Source of the DNA: Octopus bimaculoides
Lineage: Eukaryota
Direction: 5' to 3'
DNA length: 64,000 bases
Assembly: GCF_001194135.2 (NCBI RefSeq)
Contig: NC_068985.1
Location: 4,913,703-4,977,702, forward strand
The translations under genes were made by a program, and so were the position numbers. Positions within the stretch are counted from its first letter, which is position 1. Every line of letters starts with the position of its first letter. This document shows positions 3,228-58,224 of this stretch, piece by piece. A model generated the notes under the pieces. The model made no database searches. It worked only from the letters and a program-made list of their open reading frames with translations, and had not been told where the DNA came from.

Positions 3228-3933
3228 AAATTATTGTGTATAGTGCTCACTATATGTGTGTGTGTGTGTGTGTTTGTGCGTGTGACCGTCTTTGTCACTG
3301 TTCTACTACAAATAAACATTAAAGAAATAAAAATTTTATATGGAACTTGCCAAACGTATAGTTTCACTTTCTCGAGACTAATACCAATCAGTAAATATGT
3401 CTTTCTTCTTAGTTGAAATTTACAGAAAAACAAAAGGCAAAGACAGGTGTATAAACAACAAGCAGGTGTATTAGTGTGATGCTCGGGAAGGTGAGAATGT
3501 CTTTTATGTTTCGAGCCTACGCTCTTCAACAGAAAGGAATATGAGGAAATAAACAGAGAGAATAAAAAAAAAACTGGTGGATTTAGCAGTCAATCAGGGT
3601 AAATGGTTGGAGAAAAGTAGTTGGACAGGAGAGCTGCACAAGCACAGCTTCACTCGAGGGAAGGGAATTGGAGGGCAGGGAATTTAAATTACAATTTTTT
3701 TTTTTTTGCTTATATCCCAGCAATGAACCACACATGATACTTTCCTATCATCAAACCATAAAATGTGTTTATCACGAGAAAAAATTGAAAAACTTCAATG
3801 CATGTGAGAGTGATAAAGAAACAAGGAAGGTGTTCATGGGATATAATAGAAACAACAGTCAAATCTCCCTTGAATGACATACCTTTTCATCTATATATAT
3901 ATATATATATATATATGTGNNNNNNNNNNNNNN

Positions 3934-4750: not shown

Positions 4751-6049
4751 ATTATGAGGAGAATTTTAGGGCTTATAAATCTAATATTTTCCTATCCTTC
4801 CTTAATACCGATTCCCATATGCTTTCATATCTGCACTCGGTCTGCTTAGGGATTTATGTAATCTGAAGTGTGAACATAAAAAAAAATATTCTGGAAGTTA
4901 TGAGGAAACAAATTTGGAGTGGGTGGGCACACTTGTGAAAGTATGCCTAAAAAATAGACATTTTTCTGAAAGTTATGAGGAAACAAAACTTTCCTTTCGA
5001 GGGCTAATATTTCCTTTCAAGGGCTAATACAGAATCCCAGCCCCTGGAAAAATGCATTTAAAAAAAAATATTTTTCGGATTCTTACATTTTAGATGTCGG
5101 AGATTACAAATATGCAAAAAAAAAATTATAATTTCATTCTCCACACCCATCCAATTAAAAATCTTTGAACTTTTTTCAAAATTTTTTTCTCCTATATTTT
5201 AGATGACGGAGATTCTGAATACGCAAGAAACCACCTTTTCAAGATTTTTAATTCAAAAAGCATATAGATATATGTATAAAGAATAGATAGATATGAATGT
5301 CTTCCTGGGGTTAAAAACAATAGTAACACCGTCTTTTATAGGACTGCCACATTTAATTGACAAATATCTCTTATGAATAAACAGATAGGGATAAATAGAT
5401 TGACAGACAAATAAATGTATGGTTGAAACAGCTCAAAATTTAAAATTGGGGGAGGGGGTAAAATTTAAGCCCCTTGTTAAATTTTATAACATTAATGCTT
5501 GTTTCTCATAAAATGGTGTATATTTAATTTGATTACTTAAGGCAAACAAGTAAAATGCAAATTATTTTCACTTAAACGCTTTTGTCTATATTTAATTTCA
5601 ATTTGCATATGTTCGTCAATTTGCTACAATCTGTTTAAAGAAAACAGAATCAAAATTTTAAATTGGGTGGGGGGGGCAAGTGGTGGTGGTTTTGGGATNN
5701 NNNNNNNNNNNNNNNNNNNNNNNNNNNNNNNNNNNNNNNNNNNNNNNNNNNNNNNNNNNNNNNNNNNNNNNNNNNNNNNNNNNNNNNNNNNNNNNNNNNN
5801 NNNNNNNNNNNNNNNNNNNNNNNNNNNNNGGATATCTTTTAATGAAATTATATATATATTCCTTTCAAACAGCATGCATTACGGATGCCTAATGTGCCAC
5901 AAATCTCTTATTTTTGTTTGGCGGGTAGAAACCGGAACTATTGGAAAAAGTTTTTATTTTTTTCAATGACTGAATTACGGTGACCTAATCTGCAATCTGG
6001 GATTAATATATCCAGTGATTTTTAAGAGATATATAAAAGATATTTCGTT

Positions 6050-9078: not shown

Positions 9079-9885
9079 NNNNNNNNNNNNNNNNNNNNNN
9101 NNNNNNNNNNNNNNNNNNNNNNNNNNNNNNNNNNNNNNNNNNNNNNNNNNNNNNNNNNNNNNNNNNNNNNNNNNNNNNNNNNNNNNNNNNNNNNNNNNNN
9201 NNNNNNNNNNNNNNNNNNNNNNNNNNNNNNNNNNNNNNNNNNNNNNNNNNNNNNNNNNNNNNNNNNNNNNNNNNNNNNNNNNNNNNNNNNNNNNNNNNNN
9301 NNNNNNNNNNNNNNNNNNNNNNNNNNNNNNNNNNNNNNNNNNNNNNNNNNNNNNNNNNNNNNNNNNNNNNNNNNNNNNNNNNNNNNNNNNNNNNNNNNNN
9401 NNNNNNNNNNNNNNNNNNNNNNNNNNNNNNNNNNNNNNNNNNNNNNNNNNNNNNNNNNNNNNNNNNNNNNNNNNNNNNNNNNNNNNNNNNNNNNNNNNNN
9501 NNNNNNNNNNNNNNNNNNNNNNNNNNNNNNNNNNNNNNNNNNNNNNNNNNNNNNNNNNNNNNNNNNNNNNNNNNNNNNNNNNNNNNNNNNNNNNNNNNNN
9601 NNNNNNNNNNNNNNNNNNNNNNNNNNNNNNNNNNNNNNNNNNNNNNNNNNNNNNNNNNNNNNNNNNNNNNNNNNNNNNNNNNNNNNNNNNNNNNNNNNNN
9701 NNNNNNNNNNNNNNNNNNNNNNNNNNNNNNNNNNNNNNNNNNNNNNNNNNNNNNNNNNNNNNNNNNNNNNNNNNNNNNNNNNNNNNNNNNNNNNNNNNNN
9801 NNNNNNNNNNNNNNNNNNNNNNNNNNNNNNNNNNNNNNNNNNNNNNNNNNNNNNNNNNNNNNNNNNNNNNNNNNNNNNNNNNNNN

Positions 9886-10137
9886 CTGGTGTTGGGTGTA
9901 TGTCTTCTTTCTTCTATTCCCTGGCCTCTTCGATGCAGCATCAACGAGTGTCAGCGTCCAACTGATCGTCATGTCAAGTTCCCCTTTTTATATCTGCTGC
10001 TAGGCTCCAGCAGGCAGCCCCAGCTAGTTGTCACGTGACACTGTCTAAATTTCCCGCTGCTAGGGTCCAGTATGAATTTTAAACATACACACACACACAC
10101 ACACACACACAGAAAATCTGCCTTTTATAGTATAGAT
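9886..10137 (-). mobile_element. Probable non-autonomous Helitron 5' end
   Basis: Minus strand begins A|TCTATACTATAAAAGG followed by a (TG)n tract; the 3' end is not identified. Confidence 0.4.
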
Positions 10138-10889: not shown

Positions 10890-11502
10890 CATCAAGTGCT
10901 TCAGTTGGTGTCTTATTTGGTGTTTGGAGTGATTACTAGTGATGGCGATGTTATGCCTCCATTCATCTTCCCACACAGCCTCACATTCAACAAGGAGGCC
11001 TACATCAAGTACCTAGAGAAGGTAGTGCTGCCCTGGGTCAAGAGTGTGGCTGCTGGAAGACCCTATGTCTGGCAACAAGACTCTGCATCATGCCACACAA
11101 GCAGGAGAACCCAGTCATAGCTGTCAGACAATTTCTGTGACCATACCACCCCTAACATCTGGCCACCTAACTCCCCAGACTGAAATTTCCTTGATTATTA
11201 TGTGTGGAGCACATTTGAGTGAGAGACCAACAAAACTCCTTGTAACACCAAAGATGAACTGAAGGCAAGGATTATAGCAACATTCATCAACTTAAGCAAG
11301 GAGACTGTCCAGAAAAGTTGCAGGAGATTTCGAAGTTATCTGCAGGCCGTGGTTGAAGCCAATGGCGATTTTATTGAATGAATTTAGTCTTTAGTATTTC
11401 AAGATATTTTAATGTAATTTTGGTAAATATATCTGTTAAAAAGAGATGTCAGTGTTATTTTCCTTTTTGTGTAATGTAGACAACAATATATTCACCGCAT
11501 CC
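10890..11502 (+). mobile_element. Degenerate Tc1/mariner transposase C-terminus, DD37D (maT/mori) spacing
   Basis: YVWQQD...WPPNSPD*NFLDYYVW with 37 residues between the two Asp; in-frame stops; ORF end at about 11381. Confidence 0.8.
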
Positions 11503-26585: not shown

Positions 26586-27062
26586 AAGACTTAAGGACAC
26601 AGAATGCTTGTGTTACATAGCCAACTGGAAACGGTGTTTCCAAACAGCAGTAGCATTCTTCCCCTTCCTGGGACTGCCACATTAAGTTGGCAACAAACAA
26701 TCACTTTATTGTGCTGCTACTGTATAAGTCTCTCTCAGAGATTTAGAGATCCAATATTTTTAATTTTTTAGATCAGTGAATTTATTTCACTTGAAATTCT
26801 GTAAGTTTTCAAAGGCGAATAAGCATTGACAGCTAGCAAGCCAAGCTACTCCAGACTGATGAAGAGCAATGACTCTGAAACTAGTCTCCGGATGCTGGCT
26901 TTGCTGGGTGGAGGTGCTTATCTCCCTTGTTTGAAGACTTAAGGCCACAGAATGCTTGTGTCACATAGCCAACTGGAAACGGTGTTTCCTGGGGCTAGAT
27001 AGCAGTAGCATTCTTCCTTTTCCTGAAACTGCCACGTTAAGTTGGCAACAAACCATCACTTT
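26586..27062 (+). mobile_element. About 1.4 copies of a 348-bp hammerhead-containing tandem unit (retrozyme-like)
   Basis: Direct repeats beginning AAGACTTAAGG at 26586 and 26934, with the hammerhead between them. Confidence 0.7.
26836..26904 (+). ncRNA. Minimal type I hammerhead ribozyme, canonical core
   Basis: CTGATGA (26856-62), stem II AGAG/CTCT, GAAA (26877-80), palindromic stem III ACTAGT, cleavage triplet GTC (26884-86); stem I TCCAGA/TCCGGA extended by GCAAGCCA/TGGCTTTGC. Confidence 0.85.
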
Positions 27063-27365
27063 AGGATTATTTTGATTTTATTTTTCTGTTTAACCCATCA
27101 GCATTCAAACTGGCCATATCCAGCCAAAATATTCTACCTGTTTTATGCTCAAGCCATTCACACCTATGCTACAAAGTTATTCTAGAAATAACAAATCCCA
27201 TCATGAAGATCTTGAAGCTATGACATAATGCCTGAATGAACATTGTATTTGACAGAATAATTTGAATGCTAAGGAATTAATCCATTTTTAGAGTTAGTGT
27301 ATATGGCTACAAGTTCAGCAAGTTGTTATTATTTAGCCCTTGGTCTGTCCTTGTCCTACAGACTT

Positions 27366-53193: not shown

Positions 53194-54120
53194 CCAGTTG
53201 TACACTCAATTAACGTTATGTCGTTTTGTCTATTTACTATAATTTTCCCTTTATACTATATATATGNNNNNNNNNNNNNNNNNNNNNNNNNNNNNNNNNN
53301 NNNNNNNNNNNNNNNNNNNNNNNNNNNNNNNNNNNNNNNNNNNNNNNNNNNNNNNNNNNNNNNNNNNNNNNNNNNNNNNNNNNNNNNNNNNNNNNNNNNN
53401 NNNNNNNNNNNNNNNNNNNNNNNNNNNNNNNNNNNNNNNNNNNNNNNNNNNNNNNNNNNNNNNNNNNNNNNNNNNNNNNNNNNNNNNNNNNNNNNNNNNN
53501 NNNNNNNNNNNNNNNNNNNNNNNNNNNNNNNNNNNNNNNNNNNNNNNNNNNNNNNNNNNNNNNNNNNNNNNNNNNNNNNNNNNNNNNNNNNNNNNNNNNN
53601 NNNNNNNNNNNNNNNNNNNNNNNNNNNNNNNNNNNNNNNNNNNNNNNNNNNNNNNNNNNNNNNNNNNNNNNNNNNNNNNNNNNNNNNNNNNNNNNNNNNN
53701 NNNATATTACTATATATATATATATTACTGTATATATATATATATGGGGAGAATTCACAAAAAAAAAGACGAAGACAGGTGGTGTAGACAACAAACATGT
53801 ATTAGTTTAACGCTCGGGAAGTGAAAAAGTCTTCACCGTTTCGAGCCTACGCTCTTCCACAGAAAGGAACACAGAAAGAAATAAGGAGAGAAAATAAAGG
53901 ATGTGTAGTGGCTAGCGATCTATCATAAGCTATATTAAATCTCTCAGCGAGATATAAACAGTAGCAATACGGAATCGAAACATATAATTGCCAACCAAGT
54001 ATGGCGCCCTATACAGGACAGTGCTACTAAAGTTTATAGCCCCAGGAAGACATCACTCCCAGCTGGCTAACGACACACATTCTGTGTCCGATTAGCAATC
54101 GCTCCCGTCTCTAGCCTTAT

Positions 54121-54177
54121 GTGATACACACAGACTCGAGTTTCTTGGTGATTACCCGTCCTCAGCGTGTTAATCAC
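54121..54177 (-). ncRNA. Type I hammerhead motif with palindromic stem III ACTCGAGT
   Basis: Reverse complement reads GTGATTAACACG-CTGAGGA-CGGGTAATCACCAA-GAAA-CTCGA-GTC-TGTGTGTATCAC; the base of stem II is mismatched. Confidence 0.7.
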
Positions 54178-54559
54178 CAGCTAGTGTCTTCCTGGGGCTA
54201 TAAACGTCAGTAGCACTGTCCTGGATAGGACGCCACATTTGGTTGGCAATTATATGTTACGATTCCGTATTCATGCGGTTTATATCTCGCTCAGAGATTT
54301 AATATGGCATATTACTCCTTTTTCGAGATCAGCGACAGTTTGTCGCTAGAAAAAGCATATAGTATTTTGTGAGTGAAACGAGTTTTCATCACTAGCTGGT
54401 GATTAACGCTCATGGGTGTTGGTAGTGAATTCTTCGACGTGAGTTCGAATCGTTACACACTGATATTGTGTTTGTTGTGAGTCACCCCGCTCGGGTGAAC
54501 CAAGATTCGTTGAATTGTTGAATTTTAGCCACTGTTTTGTTTGCACCTGTGTATTCCCC

Positions 54560-55881
54560 GTCTACGGGAGAAGAGGAGAGATAGAGAATAGACAAAGTTA
54601 CGCAGCGGCAGCGACCCAAGGAATAAATGTCAACAGCCTGGAAGTACAGGAAATAGAAATTGACACAAGAAAGTGGAAGGAAGGAAGGAAGAAAATTCCT
54701 AAAAAAGGAGGGAGCCTGTCTAAAGCTGACTCTCCCAGAAGAACTGATGAACAGCATAGCGAAGAGGACGGAGGTATACAGAACGTTGTCTACGTCCTCG
54801 AACAAGATAGAGTTCGCCCCGACAGAAGAAATAGAGGAATGCCTCGAAAATGTTAAAACATTGACCACATTCTATACACGTGGAAGAAAGTATGGCTCAG
54901 TGGAAGTAAGGTTTGACAATGAAGAAGATGCCATAAACCACTCCACGGACCCGTTACGGACAAAGAAATGGATACTACTTCCAACGTACTGTGGCAAACG
55001 CGTTGCCAGAGTGAGGGTCGGAAGAGTGCCTCCCGAAATCGAGGAAGAATGGCTGGTGGCAGCCATAACGTACGATATGAAGGATGGGGCGGAGATCCTC
55101 AAGATAACAAGGACCCAAAAGGTCAATTGGTGGGGATATGGCCTCAAAGTGACCATGCAGTTGTCTTTGGAGGACTTGCATAGTGTAGCAGAGGAAATAG
55201 TACTCCCGGAAGACACCAGACTTCGAATAACAGTAGAAGGAAGACGACCAACATGCTCCCTATGCGAGAAAGAAAACGGAGAGGAGAAGAAAAGTGAAGA
55301 AACAATACCGGATAGTATCAATAAAAGAGAAAGATTGAGTGGAGGAATCATTCACAGTAGTAAACACGAGGAAGAGAAAGGAACGGGTAAATTCTCCCCC
55401 AGACAGTTAAAAAAAAAAAATAAAAGGCTAAAAGAGATTGTGACGGAAGAAAAGAGAAATAGGTGCGAAGCGCCAACAAAAGCAGTAGTGAAAGAAGGTA
55501 CACAGGAAAAAACAGCATTACAACAGGTAGAAAGCGTTTATGAAATTGGTTATGATATTTCTGCACGCCCGAACAGATCAGGACGGGAGCCGAAGCAAGC
55601 AGAAATAAAAAGGAAGAGATATAAGTGGCATTTGGTTACGTATACCAAAAAGTACATAAATAGAGAAAACGATTGTAAAATATAAATCGGTAATAAGAGT
55701 AAAGCTGCTGCCTGGAAAATACCCGGAAAGCACTAAAGGAATAGTCATAGATAGAGAGAGATTTGAGAAACTGAGAGAGATGTATGGAGATTACATGGAC
55801 CCGCTGGGGGTTTTAGTTGAGTTTGACGAGCTTCCACCGGTCCTGGAATTAGAAGATTTGAAACCCTTTACGAACATTTAA
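54560..55881 (+). pseudogene. Frameshifted non-LTR ORF1-like (gag-like RRM plus zinc-knuckle remnant) protein
   Basis: SYAAAA (54596-54613) is in one frame. The main 341-aa frame 54660-55685 has RRM-like segments (YGSVEVRF; RVRVGRVPPEI) and LRITVEGRRPTCSLC. A shifted frame continues to a stop at 55879-55881. No RT or endonuclease follows. Confidence 0.6.
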
Positions 55882-56219
55882 AAGCAAGTAAAATTTGTGC
55901 TTCATAAAAAAAATTAAAAAAAAAAACGAGGAAAATAGACTGTTAAAAAGTTTAAAGAAAAAAGAAAAAGAACGATCCAAAATAATAAGACTAAGAAAAA
56001 GAACGAGCTAAAAAAAGAAAAAAAAGAAAAGACTGTAAGAACGTTTAATTGTAAAAAAGAAATCACGGTTTCATCTCGGAGCAGGACCGAGAAAAACGTC
56101 TCATATTCGTTGTAGTTTAATTCATTGTAATTCATTATTTCATATGTTTTTTGTTCCCGCATGTCTATGTATGTCCCCTCTGTGTTCAGGCCTTGTGTCT
56201 ATAATAAAGAGAAAAGCTG

Positions 56220-56278
56220 GTGATTAACACACGCTGAGGACGGGTAACCACCCAGAAACTGGAGTCCGTGTGTATCAC
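56220..56278 (+). ncRNA. Type I hammerhead motif
   Basis: GTGATTAACACACG-CTGAGGA-C-GGGT-AACC-ACCC-A-GAAA-CTGGA-GTC-CGTGTGTATCAC; stem I pairs well, with a C-A mismatch at the base of stem II. Confidence 0.72.
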
Positions 56279-58224
56279 GTAATGCTAGAGATGGGAGCGA
56301 TGACCTCCTGTCGTAAATACTAACCAGACACAGAATGTGTCTCATTAGCCAGTTGGAAGAGATGTCTTCTTGGGGCTATAAACGTCAGTAGCACTGTCCT
56401 GTACAGGGCACCCAATTATAAACTCATATAAGTGATGCAACGACAGTTTGTGTATAAAGCTTGAAACACGTGTACCGCGGAATCCTTTGTGTTCTGTTTT
56501 CATTTTACGTTTTAATATATATATATATATATATATATTTGTGTGTGTGTGTGTGTCTGTATGTGTCGGAGCATTAGTACGCATATGGATGTATATGTGA
56601 ACGACCATGTATGTGTACGTATAGGCCAATTCGTAAAGGTCAGCTAAGGACAGTTACATGTGTAACCAACCATGAAGAACAAATCAACAGAATATATGTC
56701 TCTTGATGAGAAGCATTGACAGATCGGTTCTGTTAAGCACCGCCACTACATCTTCTTTACGTAAATCCTTATCTTTGCAGTTTCTAAGACTGGATTTCCA
56801 TATTTTTGTGGAAACTATTCTGCTTTGTTAGACGCGGAAACTTTCACTCGTGATAAAAATCTTGTACCCCAGGCATGGAGTGTGAACAAAAACTCAGTTG
56901 ATATTTTTTCTTCAAAGAAAGCTAACACTATCATTAATTTTTATTTGCTGCTGACCTACACCCTGTGACAAAATAAATCGAACCCCTGTTATCAATAAAC
57001 ATGTAAGCTAAAGTAAAATACTACTGTACTTTCTTATACACAAAAATGTCTGCATTAGCCAGAAGGATTTCTTAATTAAATCTATAAATTACCTGGAGAG
57101 GTCGAGAAACTAAATAACGACGTCTCATAAATAATCTAAAATCGGATAACCAACTCCTAACAAGCACAATTATTACATATGCACGCATAAAAATATCGTG
57201 TTCTCCAATAATAACCCCATAAAGTTGGATGCGTATCACCCGTAATATTTCAAAATTTCTATAGAACACATAATCAATAAGAACAGTAGAGTATGCATTT
57301 CATCGTCTGTCATTCAATTAAAAGAATAATTTCCCATAATTTTCCCCTAAATTCTCTCCCCATATATACAGATATATTTACAACGACACAACCTCATGAA
57401 CATGTTGCAGGACTGTGCCTCAGTTTGAACCCAGACTGTTTTCTCTTCATGCCGGTTTATGTATACAAAAACAGGATCTTTCAAATTGAGTGATAATATC
57501 AAGGAAATGCTAATGACGTTCAACAGTTACTCATCAGATTCATTGAGTGACATCAGCCAAAATACTGACCAATCAAAAGTCAGCCAAGATTTGATTGAGC
57601 TAAAAACAACTTATAAAAGAGTGGCGAACAACGGATGGTGATGGAGAGACAGAAAACGGAGTGTGGACGCAGTCTTGCATTAAGTTAGGCTTAGTTCAAT
57701 ATAAGTTGTTGCTCGACACCCAACCTCGTCAATATGAGCAGACAAACCTGAAATTATTCATCGTAGGAAATACTTGTATTCTTTCACTCTCCGTCGTCTC
57801 ACGCTATCTCTTTTCCACTGACGCAAAATCACATAAGCCGTTATTTTCTTTGGACCTTAGTCTTCTCATACTCAAAATGATTATAGACACAACATTAATC
57901 CTACTTTATGGCGTTTCTTGGAACCGTGGCGTTCTGTTTGAAACTTTTAACAATAAAACAGACAGTGAATTGAAAACGGCAGAGTACTCTTATTTTTCAT
58001 TAGACCTTTTCATCATTGTGAAAATAATCTTGTTGTTAAAAAGTCATTAGTTACATAGCGTTTTATTTTTTAATTTCATTTTGATTCTCTACCATTTAAT
58101 CTCCAGTCTCTAATATTTATCTCNNNNNNNNNNNNNNNNNNNNNNNNNNNNNNNNNNNNNNNNNNNNNNNNNNNNNNNNNNNNNNNNNNNNNNNNNNNNN
58201 NNNNNNNNNNNNNNNNNNNNNNNA

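What the first reader, a model, noticed from the sequence alone, without database searches (positions are those of the whole stretch)
53929..56460. Hammerhead-bounded element carrying only an ORF1/gag-like gene: candidate new retrozyme-derived mobile system
Label the repeat segments B' (contains the hammerhead), A' and C; together they form a ~335-nt unit. The locus reads inverted(B'A'), A', C, a 14-nt stub of B', a 1.8-kb cassette, AATAAA, then B', A' and a C remnant. The unit is homologous to the intronic one at 26586 (shared GACACAGAATG, TTCCTGGGGCTA, CAGTAGCA, CTCAGAGATTTA). An inverted upstream copy plus a downstream hammerhead repeat is Penelope pseudo-LTR architecture. Yet the cassette encodes a LINE-type RNA-binding ORF1-like protein and no RT or GIY-YIG. 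Either a hammerhead element captured an RNA chaperone gene, or an ORF1-only LINE derivative targets the ribozyme unit, with AGCTGGTGATTAAC as its TSD. I know of no description of either arrangement, but I cannot search.
Basis: partly seen in the sequence, partly recalled or inferred. Interest (0 to 1): 0.85.

Follow-up and report, generated by a model that had tools for sequence, protein, structure and literature searches.

The report
Octopus ORF1-only LINE fused to hammerhead retrozyme
This is a dead copy of a composite jumping gene found in three octopus species: a LINE element that kept only its RNA-binding ORF1 gene sits directly upstream of the self-cleaving hammerhead ribozyme of a small "retrozyme" repeat, a pairing of two retroelement classes I found no description of.

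Summary

- **The ~340-nt unit** is a metazoan retrozyme-type repeat. It is homologous to the 348-nt array at 26588 and folds far better than shuffles. Helices I and II covary between lineages.
- **The cassette** is a complete ORF2-less LINE derivative. It has a 5'UTR, an ORF1 (two RRMs, CCHC knuckle, C-terminal domain), an A-rich 3'UTR and a 75-nt tail shared with an abundant SINE-like repeat. An O. sinensis relative has this ORF1 followed 11 nt later by an AP-endonuclease ORF2.
- **It is not a one-off.** O. sinensis and O. vulgaris loci have the same tail 18-19 nt upstream of a hammerhead, in non-orthologous flanks.
- **The composites carry Penelope-like hallmarks:** (TA)n targets, inverted 5'-truncated arms and a shared 3' end. 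The fusion therefore looks co-mobilised through the retrozyme end.
- **Limits.** The window copy is dead, with two stops, a frameshift and the knuckle deleted. Only three composite loci were seen. How the junction forms (TSD insertion, site preference or template jumping) is unresolved.

I rate it a new variant of known kinds, of moderate interest.

The parts
53704..53750 (.). Left flanking (TA)n-type microsatellite, interrupted. An N gap lies just upstream.
53752..53926 (.). Unrelated interspersed repeat abutting the inverted arm. Other copies lie at 1392-1573 and 3427-3566, and in L004 and L005.
53925..54190 (-). Inverted arm of the retrozyme unit. On the minus strand it reads 14-mer, hammerhead, A'. 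Its hammerhead (about 54134-54181) has a weakened helix II.
54185..54393 (+). Direct, 5'-truncated unit copy: A' at 54185-54312 and C at 54313-54393.
54394..54407 (+). 14-nt AGCTGGTGATTAAC, copy 1. This is native unit sequence at the C-to-hammerhead boundary and reads as a target-site duplication.
54408..54626 (+). Cassette 5'UTR. Its 5' end coincides with cassette 5' ends seen at the tandem junctions in L003 and L007.
54627..55881 (+). Degenerate LINE ORF1: two RRM-like domains, CCHC knuckle (deleted here), K/E-rich linker and C-terminal domain. Lesions are TAG at 54654, a 33-nt deletion after 55265, a +1 frameshift near 55640 and an extra TAA.
55882..56214 (+). A-rich 3'UTR. It ends in a conserved 75-nt tail (56140-56214) with AATAAA at 56203-56208. 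The tail is shared with a SINE-like repeat and with the other cassettes.
56215..56228 (+). 14-nt AGCTGGTGATTAAC, copy 2. It forms the distal 5' strand of the extended helix I.
56227..56273 (+). Type-I hammerhead motif with predicted cleavage after 56266.
56215..56470 (+). Downstream retrozyme unit: B' with the hammerhead, A' at 56320-56412, an internally deleted C remnant at 56438-56451, and a short extension.
56515..56540 (.). Right flanking (TA)n microsatellite.
26588..27063 (+). Cassette-free relative of the unit. It is 1.37 copies of a 348-nt repeat, with a hammerhead core at 26856-26886.
5297..5376 (+). Solo 5'-truncated unit fragment. It ends at the same unit position as other copies.

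Best explanation
The locus is a dead copy of a recurrent chimeric, non-autonomous retroelement of Octopus. It has two parts.

**Part 1: the retrozyme unit.** This is a ~340-nt hammerhead unit of the metazoan non-LTR retrozyme / Penelope pseudo-LTR kind. It sits in a (TA)n microsatellite as an inverted 5'-truncated arm plus a direct ~1.5-mer.

**Part 2: the cassette.** This is a complete 1.8-kb ORF2-less LINE derivative. It has a 5'UTR, an ORF1 with two RRMs, a CCHC knuckle and a C-terminal domain, and a 3'UTR ending in the tail that this LINE lineage shares with a SINE-like repeat. It lies between two copies of a 14-nt unit sequence, 19 nt upstream of CUGAGGA. The hammerhead and the unit's 3' end therefore stay intact.

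**Shown**
- The architecture.
- The LINE ancestry of the ORF.
- The shared tail.
- The duplication.
- Recurrence of the tail-hammerhead junction at three loci in three species.

**Inferred**
1. LINE machinery, acting in trans through the tail, inserted the cassette with a 14-bp target-site duplication.
2. Transcripts starting in or upstream of the cassette run through the unit.
3. A Penelope-type RT/endonuclease supplied in trans primes at the unit's 3' end and copies the fusion as one RNA. This would give 5'-truncated and inverted partial copies in (TA)n.
4. The hammerhead trims or circularises such RNAs only where two sense copies flank them. That is not the case at this locus.
For: **The unit is a retrozyme-type repeat**
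- It is homologous to a cassette-free 348-nt array and to a solo fragment.
- GC is 41-44%.
- Monomer RNAs fold with z = -5.3 and -3.9.
- The hammerhead core is conserved.
- Helix I covaries: ACACACG/CGUGUGU versus CCUGAA/UUCAGG versus UCCAGA/UCCGGA. Helix II covaries: C.A, U-A, A-U at 10.1-11.1 and G-C/A-U at 10.3-11.3.

**The cassette derives from a LINE**
- 542 representative homologues share the RRM-CCHC-linker-C-terminal architecture.
- The fold is tandem RRM.
- In L005, ORF1 is followed by an AP endonuclease.
- The tail is homologous to that of a SINE-like repeat, which is itself flanked by a 14-nt duplication.
- ORF2 is absent at five loci.

**The 14-mer is native unit sequence**.

**The association recurs**
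- L001 (O. sinensis) and L004 (O. vulgaris) have the same tail 18 nt upstream of CUGAUGA. Their flanks are not orthologous.

**The fusion appears to move as one piece**
- The L004 inverted arm (9186-9941) copies 530 nt of cassette plus 226 nt of unit, at 89% identity to the direct arm.
- L001 is a 5'-truncated cassette plus unit, with no unit sequence upstream.
- Unit copies share a 3' end.
- Composites abut (TA)n, although only about 8% of the sequence lies within 60 nt of such runs.
- All of this matches the published Penelope-like element (PLE) hallmarks.
Against: - Only three composite loci were seen. They were found through protein hits, so the sample is small and biased.
- No RT-bearing Penelope-like element with this unit as its pseudo-LTR was found.
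- No full-length LINE with this tail was found.
- Window ORF1 is closer to the hammerhead-free L003 cassette (55% aa) than to the composite L004 cassette (32-39% aa). A single ancient capture therefore needs recombination or several origins.
- In the window, the inverted arm contains no cassette sequence. The perfect 14/14 duplication fits an insertion into a pre-existing retrozyme locus, not inheritance of a composite.
- The hammerhead has a C.A mismatch at 10.1-11.1. The L004 hammerhead has U at 15.1. Rfam finds none of them.
- Cleavage and transcription are untested.
Confidence: 0.5

Rival explanations
1. Insertion preference only. The ORF1-only LINE derivative repeatedly lands, by LINE-type target-primed reverse transcription, at the same spot just 5' of helix I in hammerhead units. 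Composites are never mobilised as a whole. The truncated and inverted copies are later DNA rearrangements.
For: - The window cassette is complete and sits between perfect 14-nt duplicates of native unit sequence.
- A SINE-like repeat with the same tail also makes a 14-nt duplication.
- Cassettes exist without hammerheads.
- The ORF1 tree conflicts with a single capture.
- The window's inverted arm lacks cassette sequence.
Against: - The target sequences share no similarity: AGCTGGTGATTAAC versus CGGATACGCTACC.
- SINE-like copies with the same tail insert elsewhere, so the enzyme is not site-specific.
- The L004 inverted arm spans the cassette-unit junction.
- L001 has no unit sequence upstream of its truncated cassette.
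Confidence: 0.2
2. End-to-end template jumping. During one integration event the RT reaches the 5' end of a unit RNA and jumps to the 3' end of a cassette RNA, or from one cassette RNA to another. Each event creates precise tail-to-head fusions afresh.
For: - The junction sits at the same base of the unit at three loci. The window's inverted arm also starts at that base, 54190.
- Head-to-tail cassette junctions have nothing between tail and 5'UTR (L003 at 9742, L007 at 348 and 2050).
- Adjacent L007 cassettes are only 66% alike in their tails, so they are not simple duplicates.
- No cassette 3' end seen here runs straight into ordinary flank.
Against: - It needs unit RNAs that both begin and end with the same 14 nt. 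A target-site duplication explains this more simply.
- The hammerhead cleavage site (56266) does not coincide with the junction.
- Only a handful of junctions were seen.
Confidence: 0.15
3. A one-off nested insertion of a truncated LINE into a satellite-like repeat, with no wider significance, or an assembly artefact.
For: - The window is a gapped draft assembly.
- Nested transposable elements are common in octopus DNA.
Against: - The same junction occurs in two other species' chromosome-level assemblies, in different flanks and in two ORF1 subfamilies.
- No N gap lies inside 53704-56700.
Confidence: 0.03
4. A hammerhead element captured a host RNA-chaperone gene.
For: The ORF has no Pfam match, and its relatives are annotated only as uncharacterised proteins.
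Against: - In L005 a homologue is ORF1 of a LINE with an AP-endonuclease ORF2.
- The cassette ends in a retroposon tail shared with a SINE-like repeat.
- There are hundreds of diverged, mostly fragmentary copies.
Confidence: 0.02

Closest known systems
Metazoan non-LTR retrozymes (Cervera & de la Pena 2020, PMC7229834; preprint 10.64898/2026.07.22.740005)
   Same: - Low-GC repeats of 150-450 bp carrying a type-I hammerhead, found in short tandem arrays.
- Highly self-paired monomer RNA.
- Thought to derive from Penelope pseudo-LTRs and to depend on those elements.
   Different: - Described retrozymes are small and non-coding. Here a 1.8-kb protein-coding LINE derivative rides inside the unit.
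- Circular RNA was not tested.
- Arrays here are only 1.4-1.5 units long.
Penelope-like elements, including Chlamys-2_cBra with a 3' hammerhead and an upstream zf-CCHC gag-like ORF (Craig et al. 2021, PMC8557442)
   Same: - Partial tandem copies forming pseudo-LTRs.
- An inverted 5'-truncated copy at the 5' side.
- An extension at one end (58 nt on the L004 direct arm).
- (TA)n targets.
- A hammerhead in the terminal repeat.
- Precedent for a knuckle-bearing ORF upstream of a 3' hammerhead.
   Different: - There is no RT and no GIY-YIG endonuclease anywhere in the element.
- The ORF is homologous to LINE ORF1 and carries a LINE/SINE-type tail.
HAL1 'half-L1' ORF1-only LINE derivatives of mammals (my own knowledge, not checked here)
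   Same: A long-lived non-autonomous lineage that keeps the 5'UTR, ORF1 and LINE 3' end but lacks ORF2.
   Different: - The ORF1 type differs: RRM-RRM-CCHC rather than coiled-coil-RRM-CTD.
- There is no poly(A).
- It is recurrently fused to a ribozyme repeat or arranged in head-to-tail arrays.
Composite retroposons built from parts of different elements, such as SVA and U6-L1 chimeras (my own knowledge)
   Same: Parts of separate retroelements are joined and then amplified in trans.
   Different: Here the partners come from two different retroelement classes, LINE and Penelope/retrozyme. One carries a ribozyme and the other an ORF.
Hammerhead-bearing SINE-like elements of schistosomes, Sm-alpha and Sj-alpha (my own knowledge)
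   Same: A dispersed retroposon carrying a type-I hammerhead.
   Different: Those are short and non-coding.

Membership tests
Hammerhead ribozyme, type I | Conserved core CUGANGA ... GAAA ... UH at the correct spacing | tested here: met
   The window motif at 56234-56266 has CUGAGGA, GAAA and GUC. L001 and window 26856 are also canonical. L004 has GAAU, with U at 15.1.
Hammerhead ribozyme, type I | Helices I and II supported by compensatory change | tested here: met
   Three different helix I sequences all pair. Helix II covaries at 10.1-11.1 and 10.3-11.3. Only 3 independent lineages were available.
Hammerhead ribozyme, type I | G10.1-C11.1 pair and match to the curated Rfam models | tested here: not met
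   The window and L001 have C.A at 10.1-11.1. No Rfam hammerhead match appeared even at E<=10. The canonical-looking 26856 motif is also missed, so the models seem insensitive to this minimal helix III type.
Hammerhead ribozyme, type I | Self-cleavage | not testable with these tools
   This needs in vitro transcription of monomer and dimer constructs.
Metazoan non-LTR retrozyme | Tandem repeats of 150-450 bp with low GC and a type-I hammerhead | tested here: met
   The array at 26588 has a 348-nt period and 1.37 copies. The pre-insertion state at this locus was about 1.5 copies. GC is 41-44%.
Metazoan non-LTR retrozyme | Highly self-paired monomer RNA | tested here: met
   z = -5.3 and -3.9 against dinucleotide-preserving shuffles.
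Metazoan non-LTR retrozyme | Expression as circular RNA | not testable with these tools
   No transcript data were available.
Metazoan non-LTR retrozyme | Small and non-coding | tested here: not met
   The composite carries a 1.8-kb cassette with an ORF of about 418 codons.
Penelope-like element (autonomous) | ORF encoding RT plus GIY-YIG endonuclease | tested here: not met
   The cassette ORFs have no Pfam match. The only long ORF is the ORF1 homologue.
Penelope-like element (insertion signature) | Partial tandem or inverted 5'-truncated copies, an extension at one end, and microsatellite targets | tested here: met
   The window has an inverted arm plus a direct partial unit. The L004 arms are 89% identical, with a 58-nt extension on one side. 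(TA)n lies at the ends of all three composites.
LINE ORF1p (RRM plus CCHC type) | RRM fold | tested here: met
   The AF2 model has pLDDT 86.8. The top Foldseek matches are tandem-RRM proteins such as IMP3 RRM12 and hnRNP A1 UP1, at probability 0.99.
LINE ORF1p (RRM plus CCHC type) | CCHC zinc knuckle | tested here: inconclusive
   The knuckle is present in relatives (zf-CCHC in P0001 and P0011). In the window copy it is deleted by a 33-nt gap.
LINE (autonomous) | ORF2 with endonuclease and RT downstream of ORF1 | tested here: not met
   ORF2 is absent from the window, L001, L003, L004 and L007 cassettes. It is present only in the relative L005, as Exo_endo_phos at E=1.2e-7.
ORF1-only LINE derivative (HAL1-like) | LINE 5'UTR, ORF1 and 3' tail kept; ORF2 lost; flanked by a target-site duplication | tested here: met
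   Five loci lack ORF2. The tail is shared with a SINE-like repeat. The 14-nt duplication is exact.
Plant LTR retrozyme | LTRs with type-III hammerheads, PBS and PPT, and 4-bp duplications | tested here: not met
   The hammerhead is type I, there are no LTRs, and the duplication is 14 nt.

The most novel reading that the evidence does not exclude
Octopods may harbour a lineage of protein-coding retrozymes. These would be hammerhead-bearing, Penelope-dependent RNAs that have permanently adopted a LINE ORF1 (RRM-RRM-CCHC) as their own RNA-packaging protein. In that case ORF1, the conserved LINE tail and the ribozyme unit evolve together as one element, which draws on two different retrotransposition machineries.
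Probability: 0.2. Interest if true: 0.8.

Novelty: new variant of a known kind. Interest (0 to 1): 0.55.

Why it matters
Animal retrozymes are described as small non-coding parasites of Penelope-like elements. LINE derivatives are described as parasites of LINEs. A recurrent fusion of the two would show several things.

- Ribozyme repeats can carry kilobase-sized coding cargo.
- Two retroelement classes can be stitched into one transcript.
- The position just 5' of hammerhead helix I is either permissive or preferred for such fusions.

It also gives a concrete system for asking whether a hammerhead can set the 3' end of, or circularise, a protein-coding retroelement RNA.

On the practical side, the ORF1 family has 542 representative clusters and no Pfam model. 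It contaminates cephalopod gene models, and this work supplies a fold assignment for it.

Tried and rejected
- **Rfam.** A gathering-threshold scan of the whole window and E<=10 scans of both repeat regions found no hammerhead. I treated this as a sensitivity limit, because the canonical-looking 26856 motif is also missed.
- **Sequence-level annotation of the ORF.** Pfam and the PDB sequence search found nothing.
- **First AlphaFold run.** With 4 sequences it gave pLDDT 35 and was unusable.
- **Word-indexed protein searches.** They returned only 3, 1 and 8 hits. The exhaustive HMMER search was needed.
- **Pfam on the ten longest homologues.** No RT was found. The WD40, LDL-receptor and astacin hits are chimeric gene models.
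- **Orthology of L001 to the window.** Rejected, because only interspersed repeats align outside the element.
- **P0002.** It has no contig on record.
- **L002, L006 and L009.** These are fragments or too degenerate to show 3' ends.
- **tRNA origin of the SINE-like repeat.** ARAGORN found nothing, so I call it only 'SINE-like'.
- **Metagenome scan for the tail.** It gave one chance match in an unrelated coding contig.
- **Automatic alignment of the hammerheads.** MAFFT put helix III and helix I out of register. I registered the pairs by script and by eye instead.
- **Using the tail for phylogeny.** Rejected. The tail is 70-93% conserved across cassettes whose ORF1s are only 32-55% identical, so it is under constraint.
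- **Not done.** I did not look for a Penelope RT/GIY-YIG gene carrying this unit as its pseudo-LTR.

Full report
**Source and observation**

The window is cephalopod DNA from a gapped draft assembly. Its ORF matches only uncharacterised Octopus proteins.

- an inverted unit arm at 53925-54190
- a direct partial unit at 54185-54393
- the exact 14-mer AGCTGGTGATTAAC at 54394 and 56215
- a 1,807-nt cassette at 54408-56214
- a downstream unit from 56215.

The hammerhead reads ACACACG / CUGAGGA / CGGG-UAACCA-CCCA / GAAAC-UGGA-GUC / CGUGUGU, with predicted cleavage after 56266.

**The repeat unit**

A profile built only from this locus and L001 finds three further matches:
- the repeat at 26588-27063, at E=1.7e-13 and 6.8e-10
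- a solo fragment at 5297-5375
- the units in O. vulgaris locus L004.

The 26588 array has a 348-nt period and 1.37 copies. There, segment C runs straight into a 14-mer-like sequence and then into the hammerhead. The 14-mer is therefore native unit sequence.

GC is 41-44%. Monomer RNAs fold with z = -5.3 and -3.9. In the fold, the 14-mer forms the distal strand of an extended helix I.

Across three unit lineages helix I has three different but pairing sequences, and helix II covaries. Rfam detects none of these motifs. The window motif has a C.A mismatch at 10.1-11.1, and the L004 motif has U at 15.1.

These features match metazoan non-LTR retrozymes (PMC7229834). A 2026 preprint derives those from Penelope pseudo-LTRs.

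**The cassette**

ORF1 starts at 54627 and is broken in four ways:
- an in-frame TAG at 54654
- a 33-nt deletion after 55265 that removes the CCHC knuckle
- a +1 frameshift near 55640
- an extra TAA.

Pfam finds nothing. An exhaustive HMMER search finds 542 representative homologues. Their architecture is an N-terminal domain, a CCHC knuckle, a K/E-rich linker and a C-terminal domain.

With a 25-sequence alignment AlphaFold gives pLDDT 86.8. Foldseek's best matches are tandem-RRM proteins.

In O. sinensis locus L005 a homologue ends 11 nt before an ORF that matches Exo_endo_phos above Pfam's cut-off. The family is therefore LINE ORF1.

The last ~75 nt of the cassette are homologous to the 3' end of an abundant SINE-like repeat. 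One copy of that repeat is flanked by a 14-nt duplication.

ORF2 is missing in the window, L001, L003, L004 and L007. The ORF1s at these loci are only 32-55% identical where they can be compared. This is a diversified ORF1-only lineage, not a sporadic deletion.

**Recurrence**

L001 (O. sinensis) is a 5'-truncated cassette of the window's subfamily with two secondary insertions. Its tail is followed after 18 nt by CUGAUGA and the unit.

L004 (O. vulgaris) has a very different ORF1, but its tail is 93% identical over the last ~55 nt. That tail is again followed after 18 nt by a hammerhead and unit.

Outside the element, the window and L001 share only interspersed repeats. Hammerhead-like motifs in all the DNA held are essentially confined to cassette tails and to 26856.

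**How it moves**

The L004 inverted arm (9186-9941) copies 530 nt of cassette plus 226 nt of unit, at 89% identity to the direct arm. The direct arm runs 58 nt further.

All three composites sit in or next to (TA)n runs. Only about 8% of the sequence lies within 60 nt of such runs.

Unit copies share a 3' end.

These are the hallmarks listed for Penelope-like elements in PMC8557442. That paper also reports a Chara element with a 3' hammerhead and an upstream zf-CCHC ORF.

I infer that the fusion is copied as one RNA from the unit's 3' end by a Penelope-type enzyme acting in trans. I found no such enzyme gene linked to this unit.

**What remains open**

In the window, the complete cassette and the perfect duplication fit a LINE-type insertion into an existing retrozyme locus. 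The inverted arm there has no cassette sequence.

The junction falls at the same unit position in units whose local sequences are unalike. This argues against a sequence-specific endonuclease.

L003 and L007 show cassettes joined tail-to-head with no hammerhead. The neighbouring cassettes in L007 are diverged from each other. This raises end-to-end template jumping as an alternative origin of all these junctions.

Three loci cannot separate these models.

**Verdict**

The feature is real and recurrent, and it is built from known kinds of parts in an arrangement I found no description of. This copy is dead, and the element is non-autonomous.

Noticed in passing
L003:8477-10400 (O. bimaculoides CM046615.1): A circularly permuted cassette. 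The second half of ORF1, the 3'UTR and the tail are joined directly to a 5'UTR and the first half of ORF1. The outer breakpoints coincide within about 3 nt. The cause could be a collapsed tandem array, a partial tandem or a copy of a circular template.
   Followed up: partly
L007:250-2263 and L008 (Logan contigs SRR11869391 and SRR11869384, species not known): Three ORF1-only cassettes lie head to tail, with nothing between tail (AATAAAGAAA) and the next 5'UTR. Adjacent tails are only 66% identical, so this is not a recent tandem duplication.
   Followed up: partly
all cassette 3' ends seen (window, L001, L003, L004, L007): No cassette tail runs straight into ordinary flanking DNA. Each is followed either by a hammerhead unit or by another cassette. 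SINE-like copies with the same tail do sit in ordinary DNA.
   Followed up: no
L005:10159-12750 (O. sinensis CM016868.1): A degenerate LINE with an ORF1 of this family, followed 11 nt after its stop by an AP-endonuclease ORF2. It is truncated before the RT by other repeats. The LINE clade was not determined.
   Followed up: partly
L004:11790-11823 and 9394-9361: Both arms carry a hammerhead with U instead of A at position 15.1. They have an 8-bp palindromic helix III (CAUGCAUG) and a proper U-A pair at 10.1-11.1.
   Followed up: partly
window:26000-26230 and 26588-27063: The cassette-free retrozyme array lies about 350 nt downstream of an exon-like open stretch.
   Followed up: no
P0014, P0078, P0092 (representative proteins): Gene models fuse this ORF1 domain to WD40, LDL-receptor class A or astacin domains. 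These are most likely annotation chimeras caused by the element.
   Followed up: partly
window:53752-53926, 1392-1573, 3427-3566: A separate ~175-nt interspersed repeat family abuts the inverted arm. It also occurs in L004 and L005.
   Followed up: no
L001:10449-10668 and 11107-11502: Two different SINE-like insertions lie inside the O. sinensis cassette. The first has a 14-nt duplication (GGTTATGATGTTTC) and the shared tail. ARAGORN finds no tRNA-like part.
   Followed up: partly
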